Of a DNA stretch of 64,000 nt, positions 1 to 56,279 are shown piece by piece. The stretch covers positions 124,001-188,000 of the IMG/VR virus record IMGVR_UViG_3300029922_000001; one strand, written 5' to 3'. Under the pieces are notes generated by a model. It did not search any database, was not told where the DNA came from, and was given only the letters and a program-made list of their open reading frames with translations. A program made the position numbers and the translations under genes. Numbering within the stretch: position 1 is the first letter of the stretch; every line of letters starts with the position of its first letter.

Positions 1-3000
1 TTATCTCAAGCTGGAGCAACCGCATATATGGCAATTAATGCAGGTCCATTGCCTGGATTAAAGCAATTGGCGTATAGCATGAACGCTACACTAGATAACA
101 CGAATATTAATCCAATTTATGGATATGCAGTTAATTTAGACGCGGATAAGTTAGTTAATGATATTATCAGTTTTGATATTCAGCGCGGAACTGGTACTAC
201 AACTACTCCACCTACTACTTGGTCAGAACTTCCGCAACCTAATAATCCAGTGTCAGAAAGTGATACAAATTATCAGTTTAATGGACCAATGGTTAGTCGA
301 TATTTATATTTAGATACGTTACCTTTTAATGGCAAAACGCTCAATGATACATTTCAAACTAAAACGCCAATGTGGTATCGCATCAATCAAACATATAGCC
401 TTGGTTCTGCGTCAGGATCAAGATTAAGCCCTGCTTTTCAGCCTTCACGATATTCTGAGGGTAGTCCTATGCAAATGGCTCCTGGGAGCGAAGTAGGTAA
501 TTTGCCAACTACTGTTATTGCAAGAAGAATTAAAGATTATGTCTTGAGTGACCCTACTCAAGTTATGAACAGTTCACCGGTTGCTATTTTCATTGCTGAT
601 GATCCAAATCCTCCTGCTGGTAGTGCTACATTTACCTCTGGTGTATTTAATTTTAGTTTTGCCGCTCATACTGATGATGCCAATAATGTTGCTGAAACTT
701 ATTTAGTTGCAAGATTTTGGTTTCACCCAGTTGGCGTTACTTTTAATGCCCAAAATCCTCATCAATATAGAAGTGTTTCAGAGTTGATTTTTATTACAAA
801 TAGTGCTGGAGAACAGGTTATTAGCAGACAAAACCCTGCTGATGTTTCGCAATTAATGATTTCCCCAGCGTTGGGTACGGATGATGCCAATTACTCTATT
901 AACAAATACATTACTTCTGCTCAAGGAACGGGTGTTTCTAATAATGTGTGGACTTTCCCATCATCGTTTTCTCAACCTGGTAACACTTATAACCAAGGAA
1001 GATTAGTAATAGGTTTATATATTGTTACCGTTCCAAATCCTGGTGATACGACATTAAATTCAGTGAATTCAGCAACTTCTTCTGATTCATCTCCTAAAGT
1101 TTATATTACTGTTGATCCCACACGTATGAGTGTTACAACTACTATTGGTCAAACTATTACTGGTAACTTATTTCCAACTCAACCTAATTTATTTGGAACC
1201 GCAAATTATGAGTCCGTACCAGAACCTTTATATCTAAATGCTACTACATTAGCTGGCGCGACTTTAAACGCTACAAATAATTGGTACATTTACAATAATT
1301 CAGTTGCCACTCCTACTGTTAACAGCCCAGACACTGCTTTGAATAATTTAATGATAATGACATCTACAAATAACAATATTCAAGTTGCAATTCCGTACAA
1401 AAGTGTTCCTCTAACCTTTAGTTCTAATACAAGGGTGTATGCAGATTTTGTAACAAATAACCTTGTTCTCACTGATGGTAAAATAACTAACGGAACATGG
1501 ACTTTTAGTTTCACAGCAGATCAAGGTGCTGATACCGGATCTATTAGTTATAAATATCAATTTGAAGCATTTTTGTGTACAGCAGATGGCGTTTTAATCA
1601 ATTATATCTTGAAATCTCCTATTCAAGATTCAGCATCATATACGGTAGACTTAACATTACCTTATGCAATTGAATCTAATAATGTACAAATGGTAGTTAG
1701 AGTTTCAGGCTATCCATATTCCACAAATGGTACACCGATTGATTTATCAGTAATACAAACAGAATTAGGAAGTAAACCAGTTGGATTGAGAATTACAAAA
1801 TTCACAGTCTCAGCACACACATTAACCACAATGGATGTTAGTCAAACAGATAGTTTGTTATTGAGTATAGCCTCTTTTGAAGGTTTGCCAATGGTGCCAT
1901 CAGTGACATTTGGTGGTGAAAATTTTTGGGTTGATTTAGATCCAGACATGAATCAGCAAGTAGTTGTCACGTCCATTGGACCTATGTTACTATCTGCTAC
2001 CTTATTTAGTCCAACTTGGTTAGTTAATTTGCCTCAAGGTTGCGAAATAGAATACAATTCTTCAGTTTACACTGGAGATGTTGCAATTAGAACCGCTATT
2101 GGTAGTTCATCCACCAATGATACCACAGTAACAGCAGGTTATAACACTGATAGTCAACAAATTCATGTGGCACACTCCGTTGAACAATCTGCAATAACAG
2201 CAAGCACATTAGTTCAAACCGGTAAAGTTATTCAACTTATAAATATGAATAATCCTAATTTACAGGCTACCTCTACTGTAAATAACTCAGGGGCTGCTAT
2301 CTCTAAACTATCTAATCAATTTGTATCTGGATATAGATTGGCTACAGGTGGGGGTTACTCTCCATATCAATTACAAGGTGATAATCCATCTATTGTGCTA
2401 AATAATGGTAATAAGTATATTCAAATCGTTACTGAGGTTGATGAAGTTACTGGACCATCTAGTAGCATTGTTAGAAATAGAAATCTTGGGAATGTCAATT
2501 CTTGGGACAATAATAGCCCAATTGCTGCTGGTCAATTTGGAGATATCGCCAGGGTTGCCATTGATCTACAATATCCAACTGTAGTGGATTTGAATAATGG
2601 TTTTTTCTGTATAATCGGTTGGTTAGATAGTGGGTTTGCCGCTGCAAAATTTGTAAGTCCATACACTTCGAATCCACAAGGAATTGTTCCTCAAGGAATC
2701 CAGCTTATTATTGATGGTAATGGAACAACTCCACCTAACTGGGTTTTTACAAAAGGAGCAATGAATATACCCGTAGTTCAAACACCTTTAGGTTGTGCTT
2801 TAGGATCATCACAAAATATCATGGTGGTTTATCCTTTACTTGGAAATAATGGAATTTTATATTGCAAAGAGCTACAAGGTATGCAATCTGTAAAGCCTTC
2901 TAGGGAAATTGTATCTTTTCCTAAAATTATAAATAACAATTCTGACAGCTTAGCCATAAGATGCCCAAGTGTAGTATATGATGATTTAAGTGGGACTTAT

Positions 3001-3351
3001 ATATGTGCATTTTGGTGCAGTGGTAAAATATTTATTACTAGATTCTTTGATTTTATTGATACTTCCTTAAATCAATTGACACTTGTTGCTGGCAATAATG
3101 ATTTTACCAAGACTACTAATCCAGGTAATGCTTTCTTTTCAGTCGCCAATAAGAATTCTTATATTGTTAATAATGTAACATCTCCAGATGTTAGTGATGT
3201 TCTTTCTCAACGAGTTGGAATTACAATTACACCAAACTTACAAGATAAGAAAAATTCAATATTTGTATTTTATAAAAATAATTTAGATCAAGTATTTTGT
3301 AGAGAAGTTAGGCTTGGTATATCAGTTGGTGCCGCGATTCAAATTAATTAA
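1..3351 (+). CDS. Large putative virion structural protein, 5'-truncated by the window edge
   Basis: Frame is open from base 1 (first ATG at 28). N/T/S/P-rich, beta-rich composition; first gene of a run of giant co-oriented structural-type genes. No specific family recognised. Confidence 0.6.
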   Translation, partial: LSQAGATAYMAINAGPLPGLKQLAYSMNATLDNTNINPIYGYAVNLDADKLVNDIISFDIQRGTGTTTTPPTTWSELPQPNNPVSESDTNYQFNGPMVSRYLYLDTLPFNGKTLNDTFQTKTPMWYRINQTYSLGSASGSRLSPAFQPSRYSEGSPMQMAPGSEVGNLPTTVIARRIKDYVLSDPTQVMNSSPVAIFIADDPNPPAGSATFTSGVFNFSFAAHTDDANNVAETYLVARFWFHPVGVTFNAQNPHQYRSVSELIFITNSAGEQVISRQNPADVSQLMISPALGTDDANYSINKYITSAQGTGVSNNVWTFPSSFSQPGNTYNQGRLVIGLYIVTVPNPGDTTLNSVNSATSSDSSPKVYITVDPTRMSVTTTIGQTITGNLFPTQPNLFGTANYESVPEPLYLNATTLAGATLNATNNWYIYNNSVATPTVNSPDTALNNLMIMTSTNNNIQVAIPYKSVPLTFSSNTRVYADFVTNNLVLTDGKITNGTWTFSFTADQGADTGSISYKYQFEAFLCTADGVLINYILKSPIQDSASYTVDLTLPYAIESNNVQMVVRVSGYPYSTNGTPIDLSVIQTELGSKPVGLRITKFTVSAHTLTTMDVSQTDSLLLSIASFEGLPMVPSVTFGGENFWVDLDPDMNQQVVVTSIGPMLLSATLFSPTWLVNLPQGCEIEYNSSVYTGDVAIRTAIGSSSTNDTTVTAGYNTDSQQIHVAHSVEQSAITASTLVQTGKVIQLINMNNPNLQATSTVNNSGAAISKLSNQFVSGYRLATGGGYSPYQLQGDNPSIVLNNGNKYIQIVTEVDEVTGPSSSIVRNRNLGNVNSWDNNSPIAAGQFGDIARVAIDLQYPTVVDLNNGFFCIIGWLDSGFAAAKFVSPYTSNPQGIVPQGIQLIIDGNGTTPPNWVFTKGAMNIPVVQTPLGCALGSSQNIMVVYPLLGNNGILYCKELQGMQSVKPSREIVSFPKIINNNSDSLAIRCPSVVYDDLSGTYICAFWCSGKIFITRFFDFIDTSLNQLTLVAGNNDFTKTTNPGNAFFSVANKNSYIVNNVTSPDVSDVLSQRVGITITPNLQDKKNSIFVFYKNNLDQVFCREVRLGISVGAAIQIN

Positions 3352-46843: not shown

Positions 46844-46880
46844 AACAAAAAAGAGGGATTCTATTCCCTCTTTTTTTGTT
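46844..46880. terminator. Bidirectional terminator between convergent genes
   Basis: AACAAAAAAGAGGGA...TCCCTCTTTTTTTGTT inverted repeat with A and T tails. Confidence 0.85.
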
Positions 46881-47287
46881 TATTTATTTTTCTTCTTAGT
46901 TTTCTTTTCTTCTTTTGGAGTTTCGTATCCCAAAGCTGCCATTTCCTTTTCAGTATTACGATTAATTGCTGCTTCAACTGAGAACTTCTCACCGTATCTA
47001 GCTTTTAGCTTGGCAATATTCGCATCTAAGATTTTATCAAAATCAAAATTAGAAGCATCGCATAAAATAGCGGTATACCACATTAAGTCTCCGACTTCCT
47101 CAAAAAGATTTTCGTAATCTAGTGGTTTTTTGTAATAAATATGCTTTTTCATTTGATCTAAGAGTTCCGCAGATTCGGTACATAGACCAATGACAGCATG
47201 AAGTTGACGAATAGATGTTTTGTCATCAATCAAATCAGGTACACTTTCTGTACGCTTACAATTTTCGATATAGGTTTTAAATTCCAT
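46880..47287 (-). CDS. MazG-like all-alpha NTP pyrophosphohydrolase
   Basis: GLCTESAELLD..KK, EEVGDLMWY, NIAKLKARY. Confidence 0.88.
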   Translation of the reverse strand: MEFKTYIENCKRTESVPDLIDDKTSIRQLHAVIGLCTESAELLDQMKKHIYYKKPLDYENLFEEVGDLMWYTAILCDASNFDFDKILDANIAKLKARYGEKFSVEAAINRNTEKEMAALGYETPKEEKKTKKKNK

Positions 47288-47320
47288 AGCTTATTGTAGG
47301 TTTTTTTGTATAAAAAGAGC

Positions 47321-47839
47321 ATGAGTGTGTATTTTGTTGATTCGGAATTTTACGAAGACGGAGAAATAATAGATTTATTATCCATTGCTATCGTGGCAAA
47401 TGATAATAAACAATATTACGCTGTGAATTCTGATTTTAACTTCACTAGAGCCAATAAAAATAAATGGCTCAAGGAAAACGTCTTGAAACATATTGATTTG
47501 GAGGATAAAACAAATCAAAGAAGTAAAAAACAAATTAAATCAGATATTTTAAAATTTATTGGTGATGATAAATCCCCGAAATTTGTGTCAGATTATTGCA
47601 GCTATGATTATATTGTGTTATGTCAAATATTTGGTAAAATGATTGATCTGCCTGATAATTTTCCTATGTATTGTAATGATCTACAAATGTTAAAGAAGAT
47701 AGTTGGTGCTAAGGATTCTGAATTGCCAACTTTGCCAAACGAACATCATGCACTTAATGATGCCTGTCAAGTACGCGAACAATGGTTATTCTTAGAAAAG
47801 CGTTTTCAGGAAAAATTCAAACAAAAACTGGTTTTTTAA
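47321..47839 (+). CDS. DEDDh 3'-5' exoribonuclease (Rv2179c/RNase AS-like)
   Basis: YFVDSEFYEDG, WLKENVL, YDYIVLCQIFGKMIDLP, HHALNDA. Start at ATG 47321, 6 nt after TATAAA. Confidence 0.85.
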   Translation: MSVYFVDSEFYEDGEIIDLLSIAIVANDNKQYYAVNSDFNFTRANKNKWLKENVLKHIDLEDKTNQRSKKQIKSDILKFIGDDKSPKFVSDYCSYDYIVLCQIFGKMIDLPDNFPMYCNDLQMLKKIVGAKDSELPTLPNEHHALNDACQVREQWLFLEKRFQEKFKQKLVF

Positions 47840-47847
47840 GAATACCC

Positions 47848-47877
47848 TTGACAAACTTCAGAGATTGTGGATATAAT
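47848..47877 (+). promoter_or_regulatory. Consensus sigma70 promoter of the RNA array
   Basis: TTGACA (47848-47853), 18-nt spacer, TATAAT (47872-47877). Confidence 0.8.
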
Positions 47878-47886
47878 ATCAGTGTT

Positions 47887-47925
47887 ATGAAAACTATGGA
47901 CTTGAAACTTAAACGTAAGCGTTAA
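47887..47925 (+). CDS. Putative leader peptide MKTMDLKLKRKR
   Basis: 12 codons starting 9 nt after the -10 box; 4 Lys codons (3 AAA, 1 AAG); followed by alternative hairpins. Confidence 0.5.
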   Translation: MKTMDLKLKRKR

Positions 47926-48039
47926 TTTCTTCTCTCCCAAATTTTGCGGAGTGGAAGAATTCCTCTGCAAAAAGTCCATAATATTTTCCATCTTATTTAC
48001 TTATGTAGAGGTCATCGTGTGTAGTGATCTTTAATTTTT
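47895..48039 (+). promoter_or_regulatory. Attenuator-like structured leader
   Basis: TATGGACTT(47895)/AAGTCCATA(47972). TTTTGCGGAG(47942)/CTCTGCAAAA(47963) competes with CTTCTCTCC/GGAGTGGAAG. Hairpin TAGAGGTCAT/GTGATCTTTA plus ATTTTT at 48006-48039. Confidence 0.45.
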
Positions 48040-48046
48040 AGTATAT

Positions 48047-48117
48047 GGGGATGTAGCTCGACGGTCGAGTTAGAGCCTTTTAAGCTCAAGGCGTGGGTTC
48101 GATTCCCTCCGTCCTCA
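48047..48117 (+). tRNA. tRNA-Lys(TTT), atypical D arm
   Basis: Acceptor GGGGATG/CGTCCTC; anticodon arm GAGC-CTTTTAA-GCTC; T loop TTCGATT; no encoded CCA. Confidence 0.85.
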
Positions 48118-48127
48118 CCGAGAATAT

Positions 48128-48198
48128 GGGAAGTTAGTTCAATGGTAGAGCGGGAGAATCTAAATCTCCTAATGAGGGTTCGATTCCCTCACTTCCCA
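48128..48198 (+). tRNA. Amber suppressor-type tRNA (anticodon CTA)
   Basis: Acceptor GGGAAGT/ACTTCCC; D arm GTTC/GAGC; anticodon arm GGAGA-ATCTAAA-TCTCC; T arm GAGGG-TTCGATT-CCCTC. Confidence 0.88.
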
Positions 48199-48211
48199 CC
48201 GAGATAAATAT

Positions 48212-48284
48212 GGGAATAAAGCATAAAGGGTGATGCAGTTGGCTCTTAACCTTCAGAACCTGGGCTCGACCCCCGGTGTTCCCA
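48212..48284 (+). tRNA. Degenerate tRNA-Lys(CTT)
   Basis: Acceptor GGGAATA/TGTTCCC; loop CTCTTAA; anticodon stem with two T-T mismatches, A8 and T loop CTCGACC. Confidence 0.65.
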
Positions 48285-48294
48285 CGAGAAATAT

Positions 48295-48367
48295 GGGGAT
48301 ATAACTCAATTGGTAGAGTGGCAGACTCTTAATCTGTAAGTTTGGGGTTCAAGTCCCCATGTCCCTA
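48295..48367 (+). tRNA. tRNA-Lys(CTT)
   Basis: GGGGATA/TGTCCCT; ACTC/GAGT; GCAGA-CTCTTAA-TCTGT; TGGGG-TTCAAGT-CCCCA. Confidence 0.92.
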
Positions 48368-48376
48368 CGAGAGCAA

Positions 48377-48701
48377 TTTGAATTTTGGGAAGTTGGCTTA
48401 GAAACAGCTATCTTATAATGAGTGTCAAGTGGAATGCATCAGGACGAATATAGGTATGAGAAATCTGAATAATCTATCGTGCGCGGTAGATTAATACTGA
48501 AATTCGGTTGGTACTGATGTCGTGTCTCAGCTATCCCAGCATGAGGACGTAGAACCACAGGGGAAGGACAAGTGCAGTATTAATAATATGTTTGGTAGGC
48601 GAAGCTACCGAACTAAGTAGAGGAAGGTAAGGGATAGGATATTCTACAATGTTATTAATGACCCTTAGAGACTTTGGCGTAGTAGCACACCAAAATTCAA
48701 A
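48377..48701 (+). ncRNA. ~325-nt structured RNA containing a split mimic of 23S rRNA H43/H44 (GTPase-associated centre)
   Basis: Perfect 12-bp terminal helix TTTGAATTTTGG/CCAAAATTCAAA. 48387-48423 joined to 48677-48691 aligns without gaps to 23S nt 1054-1105 (reference recalled from memory). Several internal helices; same CGAGA trailer as the tRNAs. Confidence 0.8.
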
Positions 48702-48712
48702 ACGAGATGTAA

Positions 48713-48808
48713 GGGGGTATAGCTTAGTGGTTAAAGCTGGAGACTTTTGGAGTATTTCATGGAATATTGCAAAATCTCTAGACTAGGGTTCGATTCCCTG
48801 TGCCCCTA
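48713..48808 (+). tRNA. tRNA-Lys(TTT)-like with a 24-nt insert in the anticodon loop
   Basis: GGGGGTA/TGCCCCT; GCTT/AAGC; GGAGA-CTTTT-[48749-48772]-AA-TCTCT; TAGGG-TTCGATT-CCCTG. Confidence 0.75.
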
Positions 48809-48846
48809 CCGAGATTAAGACAAGTTTTATATGTATAAACACAAGT

Positions 48847-49176
48847 ATGTGCTGTAATAATTTTGAATATAATATACATCTAGGTCACCCTGTAGACTTA
48901 GAAATTGCCAAATACAAAACAATTAAACTTCTTCCTCGTCACCGAAAAATAAGTCCCTTAATTACGTGGATTATTAGAGATGATGATGGAACAGTACTGG
49001 GCACTACAGAAACTCATGGTTTAGAAATGAATGATCCAGAAATTAAGGGGATTTTACAAGAAGCTAAAGAAGCTTATCAATATAGAAATAGACTTTATGT
49101 TAAGTATGATACATGTAAAGATGAGTACGATAAGCTTGCCGTATTAACTACAATAAGATATGATTATCATACTTGA
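48847..49176 (+). CDS. Hypothetical protein
   Basis: 109 aa; TGTATAAA-7nt-ATG start. Confidence 0.65.
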   Translation: MCCNNFEYNIHLGHPVDLEIAKYKTIKLLPRHRKISPLITWIIRDDDGTVLGTTETHGLEMNDPEIKGILQEAKEAYQYRNRLYVKYDTCKDEYDKLAVLTTIRYDYHT

Positions 49177-50020
49177 CGATGCTGCAAACCAAGATATTAA
49201 TGATACAGTATCAATGATCGCTAGTAGAATGGGAATGAATAACGTATATCATATTCCAGATCGTGACGATTTAACATACGATGAACTTCTATGGCATATT
49301 CCCACAAAAGATGATCCTGAAAAGGCAATTTGGATCGGTTACATTCCTTTACAAGACAAATACGATGATCTTTATCAAGAATTGAAGAATAAAAACATTT
49401 ATTTAGTTAATGATCCTAAACAACATCAAAAAGCTATGGAATTTGACTTGTTTTATCCTATTATCAGAGAATACACACCACAAAGCGTAACTATAACTAA
49501 TATTGTGTCTTGTAAAACTGTTGCTAAAATTTTAGGATTTCCCATATTTGTAAAAGGTGCAATAAAATCAGAAAAAGAAAAAGGTATTAAAGCTTGTAAA
49601 GCAGACAATTTAGAAGAACTCAAAACTTTAGTAGATCCAATTTTGAAACAAACTTATAGGTCTAGAAATAAAGCTGTTTGCCGTAAATATGTCCCATTAA
49701 AATATGTTAAAAAAACTCCTGGTGATTTTCCTATAGGTAGAGAATATCGTTATTTGATGTATTGTAATAAAATTATAACAAGTGGCTATTATTGGGGCGT
49801 AGAAGATGAGTTATCTAAATTAAGTCATTCTGAAAAACAAGAAGTTGATAATTTAGCTATTATGATTTCTAAAAAATTACAAATACCTTTAATTGCTATA
49901 GATATTGGACAGCTTGATTCTGGAGAATGGATTGTAATTGAAGTTGGCGATCCCCAATGTTGTGGAGTATCACATTCGATGGCTTTTGAATTTTGGAATA
50001 AAATAGTTGTATATGAATAA
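49160..50020 (+). CDS. ATP-grasp domain protein (R2K/DUF4343-like)
   Basis: FPIFVKGAIKS, REYRY, IAIDIGQLDSGEWIVIEVGDPQCCG. Confidence 0.8.
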   Translation: MIIILDDAANQDINDTVSMIASRMGMNNVYHIPDRDDLTYDELLWHIPTKDDPEKAIWIGYIPLQDKYDDLYQELKNKNIYLVNDPKQHQKAMEFDLFYPIIREYTPQSVTITNIVSCKTVAKILGFPIFVKGAIKSEKEKGIKACKADNLEELKTLVDPILKQTYRSRNKAVCRKYVPLKYVKKTPGDFPIGREYRYLMYCNKIITSGYYWGVEDELSKLSHSEKQEVDNLAIMISKKLQIPLIAIDIGQLDSGEWIVIEVGDPQCCGVSHSMAFEFWNKIVVYE

Positions 50021-51908: not shown

Positions 51909-52703
51909 ATGAAACAAGATAAAGATGCTTTAGGCAACAGAATGAAGGATCATGAACACCGAACACGGATTTTACTTCCGCGTAGAACAAATACAATGAT
52001 TAGGCTTGATGGAAAAGCTTTTCATACCTTTACAAAAGGATTCAAACGTCCTTTTGATACGGATTTAATGAATATCATGAATCAAACAGCATTAGAAACA
52101 TGTTCTACAATTCAAGGTGCCAAGTTTGCTTATGTTCAATCTGATGAAATTACTATTTTGGTTACAGATTACGAAACTGATGCATGGTTTGATGGTAATA
52201 TCCAGAAGATGACATCAATTTCAGCTTCTTATGCAACATCTGCGTTCAATGCTCATTATGGTAAATACATTTACGATCAAAATCCTAGCGAGTTTGACCC
52301 CTTAAAGGTTAAAAAAGCTAATTTTGATAGCCGTGTATGGACTTTAGCTGATCCTAATGAAGTTATTAATGTTTTAATTTGGAGACAACAAGATTGTGTA
52401 AAAAATAGTATTTCTATGGCAGCACAATCAATGTTCTCTCAGAAAGAATTGCAAAATAAGCATTCTGACGACATGCAAGAGATGATGTGGCAAAAAGGCG
52501 TCAATTGGAATGATTATACTGTTGGCGAAAAGCGTGGTCGTTTTATCGAAAAGATTTCCACACAAAAGGATATCGAATACATAGATAAGCGAACTGGTGA
52601 AAAACATATCAAAGAAGGTGTTATTCGATCTAAATGGAAAGTCGTAGAACCACCAACTTTTTCAACAGACAAAGACTTTATTCGTCGTTTCATGCCCATT
52701 TAA
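51909..52703 (+). CDS. Thg1-like tRNA(His) guanylyltransferase / 3'-5' polymerase
   Basis: IRLDGKAFHTFT, AYVQSDEIT, WFDGNIQKM, FDSRV, WRQQDCVKNSI. Confidence 0.93.
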   Translation: MKQDKDALGNRMKDHEHRTRILLPRRTNTMIRLDGKAFHTFTKGFKRPFDTDLMNIMNQTALETCSTIQGAKFAYVQSDEITILVTDYETDAWFDGNIQKMTSISASYATSAFNAHYGKYIYDQNPSEFDPLKVKKANFDSRVWTLADPNEVINVLIWRQQDCVKNSISMAAQSMFSQKELQNKHSDDMQEMMWQKGVNWNDYTVGEKRGRFIEKISTQKDIEYIDKRTGEKHIKEGVIRSKWKVVEPPTFSTDKDFIRRFMPI

Positions 52704-53099: not shown

Positions 53100-54268
53100 A
53101 GGAATCTTAATATATACATAAGAATTTATATTTATGCTTATAAATAGATCTATTCAATATAGATTATATCCTAACAATAAACAAATTAAATTATTATCTA
53201 ATAATTTGGAAGGTTGTAGACTACTTTATAATCAAATGTTGAATCAAAGAAAAGAAGGATGGGAACAAGATAAGCAATCCTTTTCTTGTTATGATCAGCA
53301 AAAATATTTTAAAGATTATCTAGATAAACTAGAATATAATATTCATGCTCAAGTTAAACAAAATGTTGCCGTTAGAGTTGACTTAGCTTTTAAGGCTTTC
53401 TTTCGTAGAATTAAAAATAAAGAAAATCCAGGTTATCCTAGATTTAAATCTTTTGGTAGATATGATTCATTCACTTATCCTCAAACTGATTACGGATATA
53501 AAATTAAAGATAAACAAATATATTTATGTAAGATAGGTAATGTTAAAGTTGTTATTCATAAACAAATCACTGGATTTATCAAAACATGTACTATCAAGAA
53601 AGAAAGTGATAGATGGTTTGTTATTTTTACTTATGAAGCAGAATCAACATCTTATGAATCTTCTACTAATTTAGAGATTGGTATTGATGTAGGTTTAAAA
53701 TCTTTTGCAGTGTTCTCAGATAATACAACTATTGATAATCCTAGATTCTTTAAACAAGAAGAAAAGAATATTGGAAGATTACAAAGACGAAAAGAAAAAG
53801 CTAATGGTAATCAAAAACAAAAATTAAAGAAAGCTATTCAAAAACGTCATGCTAAAGTTAAAAATAAGAGAAAAGATTTTTGTCATAAGCTTTCGAGATC
53901 AATCGTCAATAAATATAAAATTATTTGCATTGAAGATTTAAACATTAATCAAATGAAAGAAAACATGAGATATTTATCAAAAAGTATTCATGATGCTTCT
54001 TGGAAACTATTCTTGAACTATCTAATCTATAAAGCGGAAGAAGCTGGTAGATTATTAATTCAAGTCAATCCTGCGTATACTACCCAGGATTGTAGTAAAT
54101 GTGGTTATAGAGTTAAAAAGAAGCTTTCAGATCGTATTCATAATTGTCCTAATTGTGGACTCTCTATGGATCGTGATCTAAATGCTTCCCTAAACATTTT
54201 GAGAATAGGATTATATTCTCTTGGTATTAAATCCATAGAAGATTCTTTTAATTAAGAATAGTAATCAC
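53100..54268 (+). mobile_element. Solo-TnpB (IS1341-like) element
   Basis: No TnpA. The 3' end AGAAG-ATTCTT-TTAATT-AAGAAT-AGTAATCAC resembles an IS605 right-end hairpin ending in TCAC (54265-54268). Left end not defined. Confidence 0.6.
53134..54255 (+). CDS. tnpB: TnpB RNA-guided endonuclease (IS200/IS605 OrfB), intact D-E-D triad
   Basis: HTH YRLYPN, GYPRFKS, IGIDVGL, ICIEDL, CSKC..CPNC, DRDLNASLNI. Confidence 0.95.
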   Translation: MLINRSIQYRLYPNNKQIKLLSNNLEGCRLLYNQMLNQRKEGWEQDKQSFSCYDQQKYFKDYLDKLEYNIHAQVKQNVAVRVDLAFKAFFRRIKNKENPGYPRFKSFGRYDSFTYPQTDYGYKIKDKQIYLCKIGNVKVVIHKQITGFIKTCTIKKESDRWFVIFTYEAESTSYESSTNLEIGIDVGLKSFAVFSDNTTIDNPRFFKQEEKNIGRLQRRKEKANGNQKQKLKKAIQKRHAKVKNKRKDFCHKLSRSIVNKYKIICIEDLNINQMKENMRYLSKSIHDASWKLFLNYLIYKAEEAGRLLIQVNPAYTTQDCSKCGYRVKKKLSDRIHNCPNCGLSMDRDLNASLNILRIGLYSLGIKSIEDSFN

Positions 54269-55337: not shown

Positions 55338-56279
55338 TTACTCTTCGTCGGTAACATATTTTTTATGAGCAGGGTTCTCTTTTTTAAAGATTCTAGCGTA
55401 ATATTCTTCATAAGTATTAAAAACTTCTCTTGTAGTTACAACAAAGTAAATCTTTTCAATTTGAGATTCTTGGTTTTCTTCAAAATATCTTAATACAGCA
55501 GAAATTTGAGCTAAAGCACCTTGATAAACATTAAGAGTTCCGCAATCCATAGGGGTAATAACTAAACTCTTGCATTGTATACTGTCAGCTAACAATAATG
55601 AACGGTTAGTTGCAGTAGAAATGTATTTTTCTTCTGTTAATCCTCCACCACCTGATACAATAGCGTGGGCAACACTCTTGAAAGGTAATTCTGGAATATT
55701 AGATGCATCAGTGTTGTAAACATGACCCATTTTAATAGGAACACCATTTTCATTAATTCTATTAAGTTGATTTTGTAGTTTAAAACCACTTAAAGTTTGC
55801 AATACTGGATCAAGAATTTCTAATAGGTTGTTATTTGGATATACAAGCATATCAGCTTTAACCTTATAGGGAGAAGGGACTAAATGAACAGAAATTTTCA
55901 CATTGTCAATACTAGGCTTGTAGGCTTGTGGTTTTTCATCATCATTTTTACGATAAGGTTGATAATCTTCAACGACTTCATTACCAATCACAACGTCTTC
56001 TTCGGAATTCCAATCGTACATGCTGTGTAAGAAAACACAGTTCTCATATTTACCGCGACAATTTTCATCCCACTTTTCATTATTGATATAATGTTGTTTA
56101 TTTGGGACAATATCATTAAAAACACCAATTAGAGGATTGACAAACTTTTTATTGTCTTCATCAAATTCTTCTTCCACCATGTTTTTAAAAACACAATCAT
56201 ATTGTGAATTGTCAAATATTACATAAAATGGACATTCTGCACATGCCTGTTGTATAGAAAGTATTTTTATTTTTTTCAT
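55338..56279 (-). CDS. Protein with C-terminal divergent macrodomain
   Basis: KADMLVYPNNNL, GHVYNTDA, KSVAHAIV, KSLVITPMDCG and IEKIYFVV follow macrodomain motif order; the canonical NAAN and GGG are altered. Confidence 0.75.
   Translation of the reverse strand: MKKIKILSIQQACAECPFYVIFDNSQYDCVFKNMVEEEFDEDNKKFVNPLIGVFNDIVPNKQHYINNEKWDENCRGKYENCVFLHSMYDWNSEEDVVIGNEVVEDYQPYRKNDDEKPQAYKPSIDNVKISVHLVPSPYKVKADMLVYPNNNLLEILDPVLQTLSGFKLQNQLNRINENGVPIKMGHVYNTDASNIPELPFKSVAHAIVSGGGGLTEEKYISTATNRSLLLADSIQCKSLVITPMDCGTLNVYQGALAQISAVLRYFEENQESQIEKIYFVVTTREVFNTYEEYYARIFKKENPAHKKYVTDEE

What the first reader, a model, noticed from the sequence alone, without database searches (positions are those of the whole stretch)
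47848..48046. Lys-rich leader peptide and attenuator-like structure in front of a tRNA-Lys array
Seen: consensus promoter, then a near-leaderless 12-codon ORF MKTMDLKLKRKR (4 Lys codons of both types, three of them near the 3' end). It is followed by mutually exclusive helices, one pairing into the ORF itself (TATGGACTT/AAGTCCATA), and a hairpin plus T tract (48006-48039) just before the first tRNA. Established: amino-acid attenuators use this layout. Inference: ribosome stalling on Lys codons, as when host anticodon nucleases deplete tRNA-Lys, could switch on the phage's replacement tRNA-Lys array. This would be an inducible counter-defence circuit. Lys codons are common in AT-rich DNA and the terminator stem is GU-rich, so caution is needed.
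Basis: partly seen in the sequence, partly recalled or inferred. Interest (0 to 1): 0.85.

Follow-up and report, generated by a model that had tools for sequence, protein, structure and literature searches.

The report
Lysine-codon attenuator before phage tRNA-Lys genes
A huge peat-bog phage places a conserved 12-codon, lysine-rich mini-gene and a switchable terminator in front of its lysine-tRNA genes, which looks like a classical attenuator re-used so that the phage makes its own tRNA-Lys when lysine codons are read slowly; this is supported by computation only.

Summary
The window's only perfect sigma-70 promoter (47848-47877) is followed after 9 nt by the ORF MKTMDLKLKRKR (47887-47925). 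A helix pairs the ORF with 47972-47980, and a hairpin plus U tract (48006-48039) ends 7 nt before the first tRNA. The element is conserved in the two other lineages I could find: the ORF is 87-95% identical against 61-70% for the neighbouring gene. Start, stop, length and Lys 7, 9 and 11 are kept.

I found a second fold. A CU tract just after the stop pairs with the 5' arm of hairpin P3, which frees CCUCUGCA to pair with the terminator's 5' arm. Modelling a ribosome as a 5' mask gives three states in the window and L005:
- no ribosome: terminator
- ribosome on codons 2 to about 10: antiterminator
- ribosome at the stop: terminator

This pattern appeared in at most 1 of 200 shuffles. About a third of this phage's genes have a -10 box 4-10 nt before ATG, so leaderless translation is plausible. 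All downstream tRNAs are Lys-type or amber suppressors.

Best reading: a ribosome-mediated attenuator of a tRNA-Lys operon (confidence about 0.5).

Weaknesses: only three lineages, no significant covariation, a weak terminator that barely works in L007, and no transcript or translation data.

The parts
47848..47853 (+). -35 hexamer TTGACA
   Evidence: 12/12 with 18-nt spacer. Invariant in the window, L002, L005 and L007. Only perfect consensus promoter in the window.
47872..47877 (+). -10 hexamer TATAAT
   Evidence: TATAAT in L002 and L005, CATAAT in L007. The 9-nt distance to the ATG is the same in all lineages.
47884..47884 (+). Inferred transcription start (G, 7 nt after the -10 box). Not mapped.
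   Evidence: Inference from promoter geometry. This G and the following UUAUGA are invariant in all lineages.
47887..47925 (+). Leader ORF MKTMDLKLKRKR with stop TAA. Lys codons at 2 (AAA), 7 (AAA), 9 (AAA) and 11 (AAG); Arg CGU at 10 and 12.
   Evidence: Orthologues are MRTMDLKLKRKR (L005) and MRTMGLKLKRKR (L007), with no indels and 4 of 6 substitutions synonymous.
47895..47903 (+). P1 5' strand (codons 3-6 of the ORF). Pairs with 47972-47980.
   Evidence: (I3). Nine pairs; two positions change only to G-U or U-G.
47904..47929 (+). P2 hairpin, formed by codons 6-12, the stop codon and 4 nt beyond it.
   Evidence: One compensatory change (A-U to G-C at columns 24/43). One pair is broken by a synonymous Leu change in L007.
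47927..47937 (+). Segment 0: a CU-rich tract starting 2 nt after the stop. In the alternative fold it pairs with 47948-47959.
   Evidence: An 11-bp uninterrupted helix in L007, in a different register.
47944..47970 (+). P3 hairpin. The 5' arm and loop form segment 1 (47948-47959). The 3' arm CCUCUGCA forms segment 2 (47962-47969).
   Evidence: U-A to A-U and G-U to A-U changes.
47972..47980 (+). P1 3' strand AAGUCCAUA. It closes the three-way junction and blocks the antiterminator.
   Evidence: Invariant in all lineages.
48004..48011 (+). Segment 3, UGUAGAGG. It pairs with segment 2 to form the antiterminator and overlaps the terminator's 5' arm by 6 nt.
   Evidence: 97% of cells paired. Extended to 9 bp in L007.
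48006..48033 (+). P4 terminator-like hairpin: 10-bp stem, 8-nt loop.
   Evidence: Hairpin energy is -9.1 kcal/mol in the window, -9.3 in L005 and -5.8 in L007.
48034..48039 (+). U tract (AUUUUU), 7 nt before the first tRNA.
   Evidence: L005 has AUUUUUU and L007 has AUUUUUU.
48047..48119 (+). tRNA-Lys (UUU)
48128..48200 (+). tRNA with anticodon CUA (amber suppressor; ARAGORN labels it 'Pyl').
48212..48284 (+). Atypical tRNA with anticodon loop CUCUUAA (CUU, Lys). Two U-U mismatches in the anticodon stem and an unusual T loop.
   Evidence: Rfam tRNA, 45 bits; missed by ARAGORN. The loop was read.
48295..48368 (+). tRNA-Lys (CUU)
48377..48701 (+). Stable RNA of unknown family inside the array, closed by a 12-bp stem. 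Its 5' part copies the 23S rRNA region around positions 1050-1085.
   Evidence: (I4).
48713..48810 (+). tRNA with a 24-nt hairpin insertion in the anticodon loop. Most likely Lys (UUU), not Gln as ARAGORN labels it.
   Evidence: Its anticodon stem GGAGA/UCUCU and loop halves CUUUU..AA match those of tRNA-Lys(UUU) in L002 and L005.

Best explanation
This is a ribosome-mediated (leader-peptide) transcription attenuator that controls an operon of tRNA-Lys genes, an amber-suppressor tRNA and a stable RNA in a 441-kb phage.

A strong early-type promoter starts a transcript whose first codons, from about nucleotide 4, encode M(K/R)TM(D/G)LKLKRKR. The RNA can adopt two folds.

- OFF fold: P1 pairs ORF codons 3-6 with 47972-47980 and locks a three-way junction with P2 and P3. 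The hairpin 48006-48033 plus U tract is then free to terminate transcription 7 nt before the first tRNA.
- ON fold: the CU tract just after the stop (47927-37) pairs with the 5' arm of P3. This frees CCUCUGCA (47962-69) to pair with UGUAGAGG (48004-11), which is the 5' arm of the terminator.

The ribosome's position chooses between them.
- A ribosome on the ORF melts P1 and P2. If it is still at codons 2 to about 10 when the polymerase reaches the terminator, for example because Lys codons 7 and 9 (and possibly 11, which sits on the boundary) are decoded slowly, the ON fold forms and the tRNA genes are transcribed.
- A ribosome that has reached the stop covers the CU tract, so P3 and the terminator form.
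- With no ribosome, P1 forms and the terminator forms.

Because the operon's products decode the leader's Lys codons, the loop is self-limiting.

Shown: the sequence features, their conservation, the two alternative folds and the dependence on the mask in the energy model.
Inferred: the transcription start, translation of the ORF, termination at the hairpin, and lysine as the sensed signal.
For: 1. The element is conserved well above its surroundings. The ORF is 37/39 (L005) and 34/39 (L007) identical. The rest of the leader is 92/114 and 78/114. The adjacent exonuclease gene is 365/519 and 324/534 (alignment).

2. ORF integrity is kept. AUG, UAA, the length, the -10 to AUG spacing and Lys 7, 9 and 11 are invariant. 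There are no indels in the ORF, while the rest of the leader has several. Four of 6 substitutions are synonymous (P = 0.04), including CUU to UUG, which breaks a P2 pair.

3. The three-state switch appears at equilibrium in the window and L005. P(terminator) is 0.8 when free, 0.03-0.15 with nt 1-15 to 1-45 masked, and 0.75-0.98 with nt 1-48 to 1-60 masked. It holds from 15 to 37 C. It appeared in 1 of 200 and 0 of 200 dinucleotide shuffles of the segment between stop and terminator.

4. A positive control worked. The truncated-transcript version of the scan reproduces E. coli trpL: 0 when free, 0.69 at the Trp codons, 0.03-0.3 at the stop. It gives the same shape for the window leader: 0.2 when free, about 1.0 at codons 1-11, and 0.98/0.19/0.04 at the stop for leading edges of +9/+12/+15.

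5. Leaderless starts are normal in this phage. TATAAT or TATAAA ends 4-10 nt before the ATG in 13 of 37 long ORFs, against 1.2% of control ATGs. Shine-Dalgarno motifs are rare. A leaderless leader-peptide attenuator is documented in Corynebacterium ilvB (PMC5784534).

6. The cargo is cognate. Every tRNA behind the leader in all lineages is Lys-type (UUU or CUU) or an amber suppressor.

7. There is no other promoter between the terminator and the tRNAs; the gap is 7 nt.
Against: - Only three independent lineages were found. Counts on both folds show conserved pairing (92% of cells against about 50% in slid controls) but no statistically significant covariation.
- The terminator is weak and G-U rich. 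The consensus scan did not call it.
- In L007 it is only -5.8 kcal/mol. The model predicts read-through in nearly every state there, with only partial terminator formation when the ribosome is at the stop at 15 C.
- In L005 the truncated-transcript scan keeps the antiterminator even with the ribosome at the stop.
- The equilibrium scan failed on the trpL control, so these scans are indicative, not validated predictors.
- The 9-nt gap from the -10 box to the ATG is at the long end for this phage, where the mode is 6. The mRNA may therefore carry about 3 extra 5' nucleotides.
- The Lys codons are interleaved rather than tandem. Codon 2 is Arg in the relatives. The last five codons are identical at nucleotide level, as an RNA-structure constraint (P2) would also predict.
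- The metatranscriptome contigs that were laid show no leader RNA, which is uninformative at that depth.
Confidence: 0.5

Rival explanations
1. The same terminator/antiterminator switch operates without translation. The P1-P2-P3 three-way junction would be an aptamer or binding site for a small molecule, a protein or a tRNA. The 12-codon ORF would be a by-product of constrained RNA sequence.
For: - P1, P2 and P3 are conserved, with wobble-compatible changes and two compensatory changes.
- The non-synonymous D-to-G change keeps P1 paired as G-U.
- The last five codons show no synonymous variation, as expected for the P2 stem-loop.
- The free RNA lies close to the balance point between folds: P(antiterminator) is 0.2 in the window, 0 in L005 and 1.0 in L007.
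Against: - No Rfam family matches, including T-box and the lysine riboswitch, even at E up to 5.
- The unpaired 5' tail GUUAUGA(A/G)AAC is almost invariant, while other unpaired stretches vary and carry indels.
- The CU tract sits exactly where a terminating ribosome would cover it, and the switch boundary falls between codon 10-11 and the stop.
- A synonymous CUU to UUG change breaks a P2 pair.
Confidence: 0.2
2. There is no regulation. The segment would be either a small RNA gene of about 155 nt with its own promoter and leaky terminator, or a fixed 5' leader. It would insulate the tRNA array from upstream transcription and set a constant read-through level or guide processing.
For: - It has its own promoter and hairpin plus U tract.
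- The weak terminators (-6 to -9 kcal/mol) would leak in any case.
- In L002 and L005 a 41-codon ORF lies between the hairpin and the tRNAs, so the hairpin is not always next to a tRNA.
- tRNA clusters in other phages also carry stable RNAs of unknown function (own knowledge of the phage T4 tRNA region).
Against: - It does not explain the conserved alternative pairing that overlaps the terminator arm.
- It does not explain a three-state dependence on the mask that shuffles almost never show.
- It does not explain the conserved ORF.
- No leader RNA was seen in RNA-seq contigs that do show the neighbouring 344-nt RNA. This is weak evidence.
Confidence: 0.17
3. It is a translation-coupled attenuator that senses general translation capacity, or Arg or Leu decoding, and not lysine specifically. 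Examples would be host shut-off, ribosome-targeting toxins or starvation.
For: - In the model, a ribosome anywhere on codons 1-11 gives the antiterminator.
- The ORF has two CGU Arg codons, although CGU is only 0.5% of codons in this phage, and two Leu codons.
- The operon also carries a suppressor tRNA and an rRNA-like RNA, not only tRNA-Lys.
Against: - Lys 7, 9 and 11 are the conserved enriched residue (P = 0.001-0.012).
- The array holds Lys isoacceptors in every lineage and no Arg or Leu tRNA.
Confidence: 0.13

Closest known systems
Leader-peptide transcription attenuators of amino-acid operons (E. coli trpL, hisL, leuL, thrL, pheL) and of the pheST aminoacyl-tRNA synthetase operon (pheM)
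   Same: - A short ORF enriched in codons cognate to the operon's product.
- An intrinsic terminator before the first gene.
- An antiterminator that overlaps the terminator's 5' arm.
- Ribosome position selects the fold; the trpL control behaves like the phage leader in the truncated-transcript scan.
   Different: - The regulated genes are tRNAs, not enzymes.
- The ORF is near-leaderless and has no Shine-Dalgarno sequence.
- The Lys codons are interleaved rather than tandem.
- An extra lock helix (P1) pairs the ORF itself with the region after P3, so five segments take part rather than four.
- It is phage-encoded.
- My literature searches found no leader-peptide attenuator in front of tRNA genes. 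The pheM comparison is from my own knowledge.
Leaderless leader-peptide attenuators of Corynebacterium (ilvB leader MNIIRLVVITTRRLP)
   Same: The leader peptide is translated from a transcript that starts at its start codon (PMC5784534).
   Different: The Corynebacterium case is in a host chromosome and controls amino-acid biosynthesis. Here the inferred start is about 3 nt before the AUG and has not been mapped.
T-box riboswitches
   Same: They couple the state of a specific tRNA to read-through of a terminator before translation-apparatus genes, through competing terminator and antiterminator helices.
   Different: T-box leaders bind uncharged tRNA directly through a specifier loop and the conserved T-box sequence. 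There is no Rfam T-box match here, and the leader is smaller and contains an ORF.
Phage tRNA-Lys as counter-defence (T5 tRNA-Lys against PARIS AriB; T4 repair of PrrC-cleaved tRNA-Lys)
   Same: The phage supplies or restores tRNA-Lys, a recurrent target of anticodon nucleases (PMC11464382, PMC10264068, PMC11555353).
   Different: Those systems are not known to be induced by the depletion itself. Neither the host nor any nuclease is identified here.

Membership tests
Ribosome-mediated (leader-peptide) transcription attenuator | Short ORF between the promoter and the first regulated gene, conserved as an ORF | tested here: met
   A 12-codon ORF with the same start, stop and length in three lineages. 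No indels inside it. Four of 6 substitutions are synonymous.
Ribosome-mediated (leader-peptide) transcription attenuator | ORF enriched in codons cognate to the regulated product | tested here: met
   Three to four Lys codons in 12, against 4.6% Lys in the phage ORFs (P = 0.001-0.012). The cargo is Lys tRNAs. The codons are not a tandem run.
Ribosome-mediated (leader-peptide) transcription attenuator | Intrinsic terminator (hairpin plus U tract) before the first regulated gene | tested here: inconclusive
   The hairpin and U tract are present in all lineages, but the hairpin is weak: -9.1, -9.3 and -5.8 kcal/mol. The consensus scan did not call it. No 3'-end data.
Ribosome-mediated (leader-peptide) transcription attenuator | Antiterminator helix mutually exclusive with the terminator | tested here: met
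   47962-69 pairs with 48004-11 and overlaps the terminator's 5' arm. The pairing is conserved (97% of cells paired) and extended in L007.
Ribosome-mediated (leader-peptide) transcription attenuator | A ribosome stalled at the regulatory codons favours the antiterminator; a ribosome at the stop, or no ribosome, favours the terminator | tested here: inconclusive
   Met in silico for the window by both scans. Met for L005 at equilibrium only. Mostly not met for L007. The shuffle control gave at most 1 of 200. This rests on an energy model only.
Ribosome-mediated (leader-peptide) transcription attenuator | The leader ORF is translated, and read-through responds to the supply of charged cognate tRNA | not testable with these tools
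   The leaderless architecture is common in this phage, which makes translation plausible only.
T-box riboswitch | Stem I specifier loop and the conserved T-box sequence in the antiterminator (Rfam RF00230) | tested here: not met
   No T-box match at E up to 5 in 47700-48950.
Lysine (L-box) riboswitch | Five-helix junction matching Rfam RF00168 | tested here: not met
   No match at E up to 5. The leader is a three-way junction of about 100 nt.

The most novel reading that the evidence does not exclude
The leader is a depletion-sensing counter-defence switch. When a host anticodon nuclease of the PrrC or PARIS type removes tRNA-Lys, ribosomes stall on Lys codons 7, 9 and 11 of the leaderless 12-codon ORF. 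The antiterminator forms, and the phage transcribes replacement tRNA-Lys species, including variants with altered or interrupted anticodon loops, together with an amber suppressor and an rRNA-mimicking RNA. Once Lys decoding recovers, the operon shuts itself off again.
Probability: 0.3. Interest if true: 0.9.

Novelty: new variant of a known kind. Interest (0 to 1): 0.8.

Why it matters
Leader-peptide attenuation is a textbook mechanism, but I found no report of it controlling tRNA genes or acting in a phage. If confirmed, three things follow.

- A virus would be monitoring decoding of one codon family through its own ribosome sensor and answering by making the missing tRNA. That would be an inducible, self-limiting counter to tRNA-cleaving immunity, not a constitutive one.
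- It would give a simple sequence signature for finding similar circuits in other phages: a leaderless mini-ORF with cognate codons, a terminator, then a tRNA array.
- It would provide a compact natural sensor of tRNA-Lys availability.

Tried and rejected
**Searches for more relatives of the leader**
- An exact or degenerate ORF pattern and an RNA-level pattern in IMG/VR returned only the source contig or chance hits.
- The ORF pattern in JGI metagenomes returned only the source contig.
- Two patterns in GTDB genomes returned nothing.
- A tRNA-Lys core pattern in IMG/VR returned nothing.
- The INPHARED phage collection by blastn gave no relative.

**Protein routes to relatives**
- Exonuclease homologues gave the three lineages used here. 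Hits at or below 48% identity lack the synteny.
- ATP-grasp homologues led to cellular or unrelated contigs.
- A profile of the 928-aa protein in IMG/VR found no relatives.
- The 41-aa ORF has no homologues.

**Alternative explanations checked and dropped**
- An antisense 51-aa ORF (47836-47991) as the reason for conservation: rejected, because it is absent in L007 and its frame is not kept.
- Rfam families for the leader: none.
- TAG recoding as the purpose of the suppressor within this window: no in-frame TAG in any long gene and no TAG stops, so this is unresolved.

**Method checks**
- The equilibrium mask scan failed on E. coli trpL as a positive control, because that terminator is too stable. 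I replaced it with a truncated-transcript scan, which works.
- Covariation statistics on four sequences were not significant.

Full report
**Source and setting.** The window is part of a 441,498-bp viral contig from a peat metagenome, IMGVR_UViG_3300029922_000001 (also Ga0302280_1000004). The fetched locus is base-for-base identical to the window. GC content is about 34%. The leader lies between a Rv2179c-like 3'-5' exoribonuclease gene (47306-47839) and a tRNA array. Nearby genes are a MazG, an R2K ATP-grasp protein, a Thg1-like protein, a Macro-domain protein and a TnpB.

- The scan finds TTGACA-18-TATAAT at 47848-47877, 12 of 12. It is the only perfect match on either strand of the 64 kb.
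- Nine nucleotides after the -10 box begins ATG AAA ACT ATG GAC TTG AAA CTT AAA CGT AAG CGT TAA (47887-47925), which encodes MKTMDLKLKRKR.
- The 163-nt leader folds at -37.5 kcal/mol, z = -2.9 against shuffles.
- P1 (47895-47903 with 47972-47980) closes a three-way junction with P2 (47904-47929, which contains the end of the ORF and its stop) and P3 (47944-47970).
- After a linker comes P4, a 10-bp hairpin (48006-48033), followed by AUUUUU to 48039.
- The first tRNA starts at 48047.
- P4 is weak, with 2 G-C, 3 G-U and 5 A-U pairs. The consensus terminator scan did not report it.

**The cargo.** ARAGORN and Rfam together give five tRNAs and one unknown RNA:
- Lys(UUU) at 48047-48119
- a CUA amber suppressor at 48128-48200
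- an atypical tRNA with anticodon loop CUCUUAA at 48212-48284 (found by Rfam only)
- Lys(CUU) at 48295-48368
- a 344-nt insert with no Rfam family
- a 98-nt tRNA at 48713-48810 that ARAGORN labels Gln

The last tRNA has the same anticodon stem (GGAGA/UCUCU) and loop halves (CUUUU..AA) as the tRNA-Lys(UUU) of L002 and L005, with 24 nt inserted after U36. I therefore read it as Lys(UUU) with an insertion.

**Relatives.** The exonuclease led to three further contexts.
- L002 and L003: 98% protein identity.
- L005: 59%.
- L007: 55%.

All of them carry the leader. Their arrays contain only Lys-type tRNAs and amber suppressors, although the order and number differ even between the window and L002. 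Leader ORFs are MRTMDLKLKRKR in L005 and MRTMGLKLKRKR in L007.

Identity to the window:

| Region | L005 | L007 |
|---|---|---|
| ORF | 37/39 | 34/39 |
| Rest of the leader | 92/114 | 78/114 |
| Exonuclease gene | 365/519 | 324/534 |

There are no indels in the ORF, while the remainder of the leader has several. Of six substitution events, four are synonymous (P = 0.04). CUU to UUG breaks a P2 pair, whereas the non-synonymous GAC to GGC keeps P1 as a G-U pair. Both a coding constraint and a structural constraint therefore seem to act. An antisense ORF (47836-47991) does not explain the conservation, because it is missing in L007.

**The second fold.** When I masked the 5' end as a ribosome would, the minimum-free-energy structure changed. 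The CU tract 47927-47937, which starts 2 nt after the stop, pairs with 47948-47959 (the P3 5' arm and loop). This releases CCUCUGCA (47962-47969) to pair with UGUAGAGG (48004-48011), which overlaps the terminator's 5' arm by 6 nt. The same two helices form in L002, L005 and L007. In L007 the first is an uninterrupted 11-bp helix in a different register, and the second is extended to 9 bp by changes on both strands. On the alignment, 92% of cells pair, against about 50% when partners are slid. With four sequences no measure is significant. The same is true of the consensus OFF fold, which has two compensatory pairs.

**Dependence on ribosome position.** At equilibrium on the full leader, P(terminator) in the window is:
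- 0.8-0.97 with 0-12 nt masked
- 0.05-0.15 with 15-45 nt masked
- 0.95-0.98 with 48-60 nt masked

L005 behaves the same way, and the pattern holds from 15 to 37 C. With a leading edge 9-15 nt beyond the A-site codon, stalls at codons 2 to about 10 give the antiterminator. That range includes Lys 7 and Lys 9. Lys 11 sits on the boundary, and the stop codon gives the terminator. Dinucleotide shuffles of the segment between stop and terminator reproduced the three-state pattern in 1 of 200 (window) and 0 of 200 (L005).

As a control I fetched the E. coli trp leader. The equilibrium scan failed there, because the terminator always wins. A scan on the transcript truncated before the terminator's 3' arm did reproduce the textbook behaviour: 0 when free, 0.69 at the Trp codons, 0.03-0.3 at the stop. 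The same scan on the window leader gives 0.2 when free, about 1.0 at codons 1-11, and 0.98/0.19/0.04 at the stop for leading edges of +9/+12/+15. L005 keeps the antiterminator at the stop in this version. L007 is mostly ON in both versions, with partial terminator formation at 15 C.

**Is translation plausible?** The ORF has no Shine-Dalgarno sequence, but nor do most genes in this phage. TATAAT or TATAAA ends 4-10 nt before the ATG in 13 of 37 long ORFs, against 1.2% of other ATGs, with a mode of 6 nt. The leader ORF has the same layout with a 9-nt gap. A leaderless leader-peptide gene is documented for Corynebacterium ilvB (PMC5784534). Lys is rare in this window's genes (4.6%), which gives P = 0.001 for four Lys in 11 codons and P = 0.012 for three. 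That rarity also makes simple codon supplementation a weak reason to carry three to five Lys tRNAs.

**Interpretation.** The best-supported reading is a ribosome-mediated attenuator of a tRNA-Lys operon. It works like the trp attenuator, with an added lock helix that includes the ORF. It differs in what it regulates (tRNAs), in the leaderless ORF and in being phage-borne. The link to anticodon nucleases is an analogy. PrrC and PARIS AriB cleave tRNA-Lys, and T5 escapes PARIS with its own tRNA-Lys (PMC10264068, PMC11464382). Neither the host nor a nuclease is known here. Literature searches found no leader-peptide attenuator in front of tRNA genes.

**Limits.**
- Three lineages only.
- A weak terminator, and one lineage that the model calls constitutively ON.
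- No mapped transcript ends.
- No evidence of translation.
- RNA-seq contigs from four metatranscriptomes do not cover the leader. This is uninformative, because only the very stable neighbouring RNA is seen, at a depth of 3-15.

**Side findings.**
- The 344-nt insert is present in RNA libraries from four studies, while the flanking genes are absent.
- Its 5' part is 91-92% identical over 35 nt to E. coli 23S rRNA around positions 1049-1084. From my own knowledge, this is the L11-binding GTPase-associated centre.
- The 24-nt anticodon-loop insertion recurs in L007 with compensatory changes in its hairpin.

Noticed in passing
window 48377-48701 (also L002:5195-5520): A stable RNA of about 325 nt, of no known family, sits inside the tRNA array and is closed by a perfect 12-bp stem. 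Contigs from four independent metatranscriptome runs cover 48419-48662 and 48377-48599 without mismatch, while the leader and flanking genes have zero depth. Its 5' part (48384-48418) copies 23S rRNA around positions 1049-1084 (helix 43, the L11-binding GTPase centre): 91-92% identity to E. coli over 35 nt in the L002 version.
   Followed up: partly
window 48713-48810; L007:5733-5831: Two tRNAs carry a 24-nt hairpin inserted right after anticodon position 36 (CU-UUU|24 nt|AA and CU-CUU|24 nt|AA). The hairpin keeps 7 pairs through compensatory changes (U-A to C-G). ARAGORN labels the window copy Gln(UUG), but the stem and loop halves match tRNA-Lys(UUU). No bacterial-type splicing mechanism for such a short insert is apparent.
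   Followed up: partly
window 48128-48200, and the whole window: An amber-suppressor tRNA (CUA) sits in the Lys array; it is also present in L002 and L005. Among 31 long ORFs the stops are TAA 29, TGA 2 and TAG 0. No long gene in the window has an in-frame TAG, so TAG is avoided both as stop and as sense here. The inserted amino acid is unknown.
   Followed up: partly
whole window (for example the starts of the long ORFs listed): About a third of the genes have TATAAT or TATAAA, often as TGTATAAT, ending 4-10 nt (mode 6) before the ATG. Shine-Dalgarno motifs are rare. Leaderless mRNAs appear to be a main expression mode of this huge phage.
   Followed up: partly
window 48212-48284: An atypical tRNA found only by Rfam (45 bits). 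It has a CUU anticodon, two U-U mismatches in the anticodon stem and a CUCGACC T loop. The L002 copy has a normal T loop.
   Followed up: no
L002:4731-4856; L005 about 2883-3006: A 41-codon ORF (MKLIKIPLDKDNRML...) lies between the leader hairpin and the first tRNA in L002. It is frameshifted by a 1-nt deletion in L005 and absent from the window and L007. No homologue was found in the protein database.
   Followed up: partly
window 47306-47839, 46880-47287, 49160-50020, 51909-52703, 55338-56279, 53134-54255: RNA-related neighbourhood around the array: a Rv2179c-like 3'-5' exoribonuclease, MazG, an R2K ATP-grasp protein (its closest cellular homologues, 42-45% identical, are in Nostocales cyanobacteria), a Thg1-like tRNA 5'-end repair enzyme, a Macro-domain protein and a TnpB (IS605 OrfB) insertion.
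   Followed up: partly
window 48047-48810 against L002:4860-5606: The array is reshuffled between strains whose flanking genes are 98-99% identical. They differ in the number of Lys(UUU) genes and in the position of the suppressor. The 109-aa ORF 48847-49176 is present only in the window.
   Followed up: no
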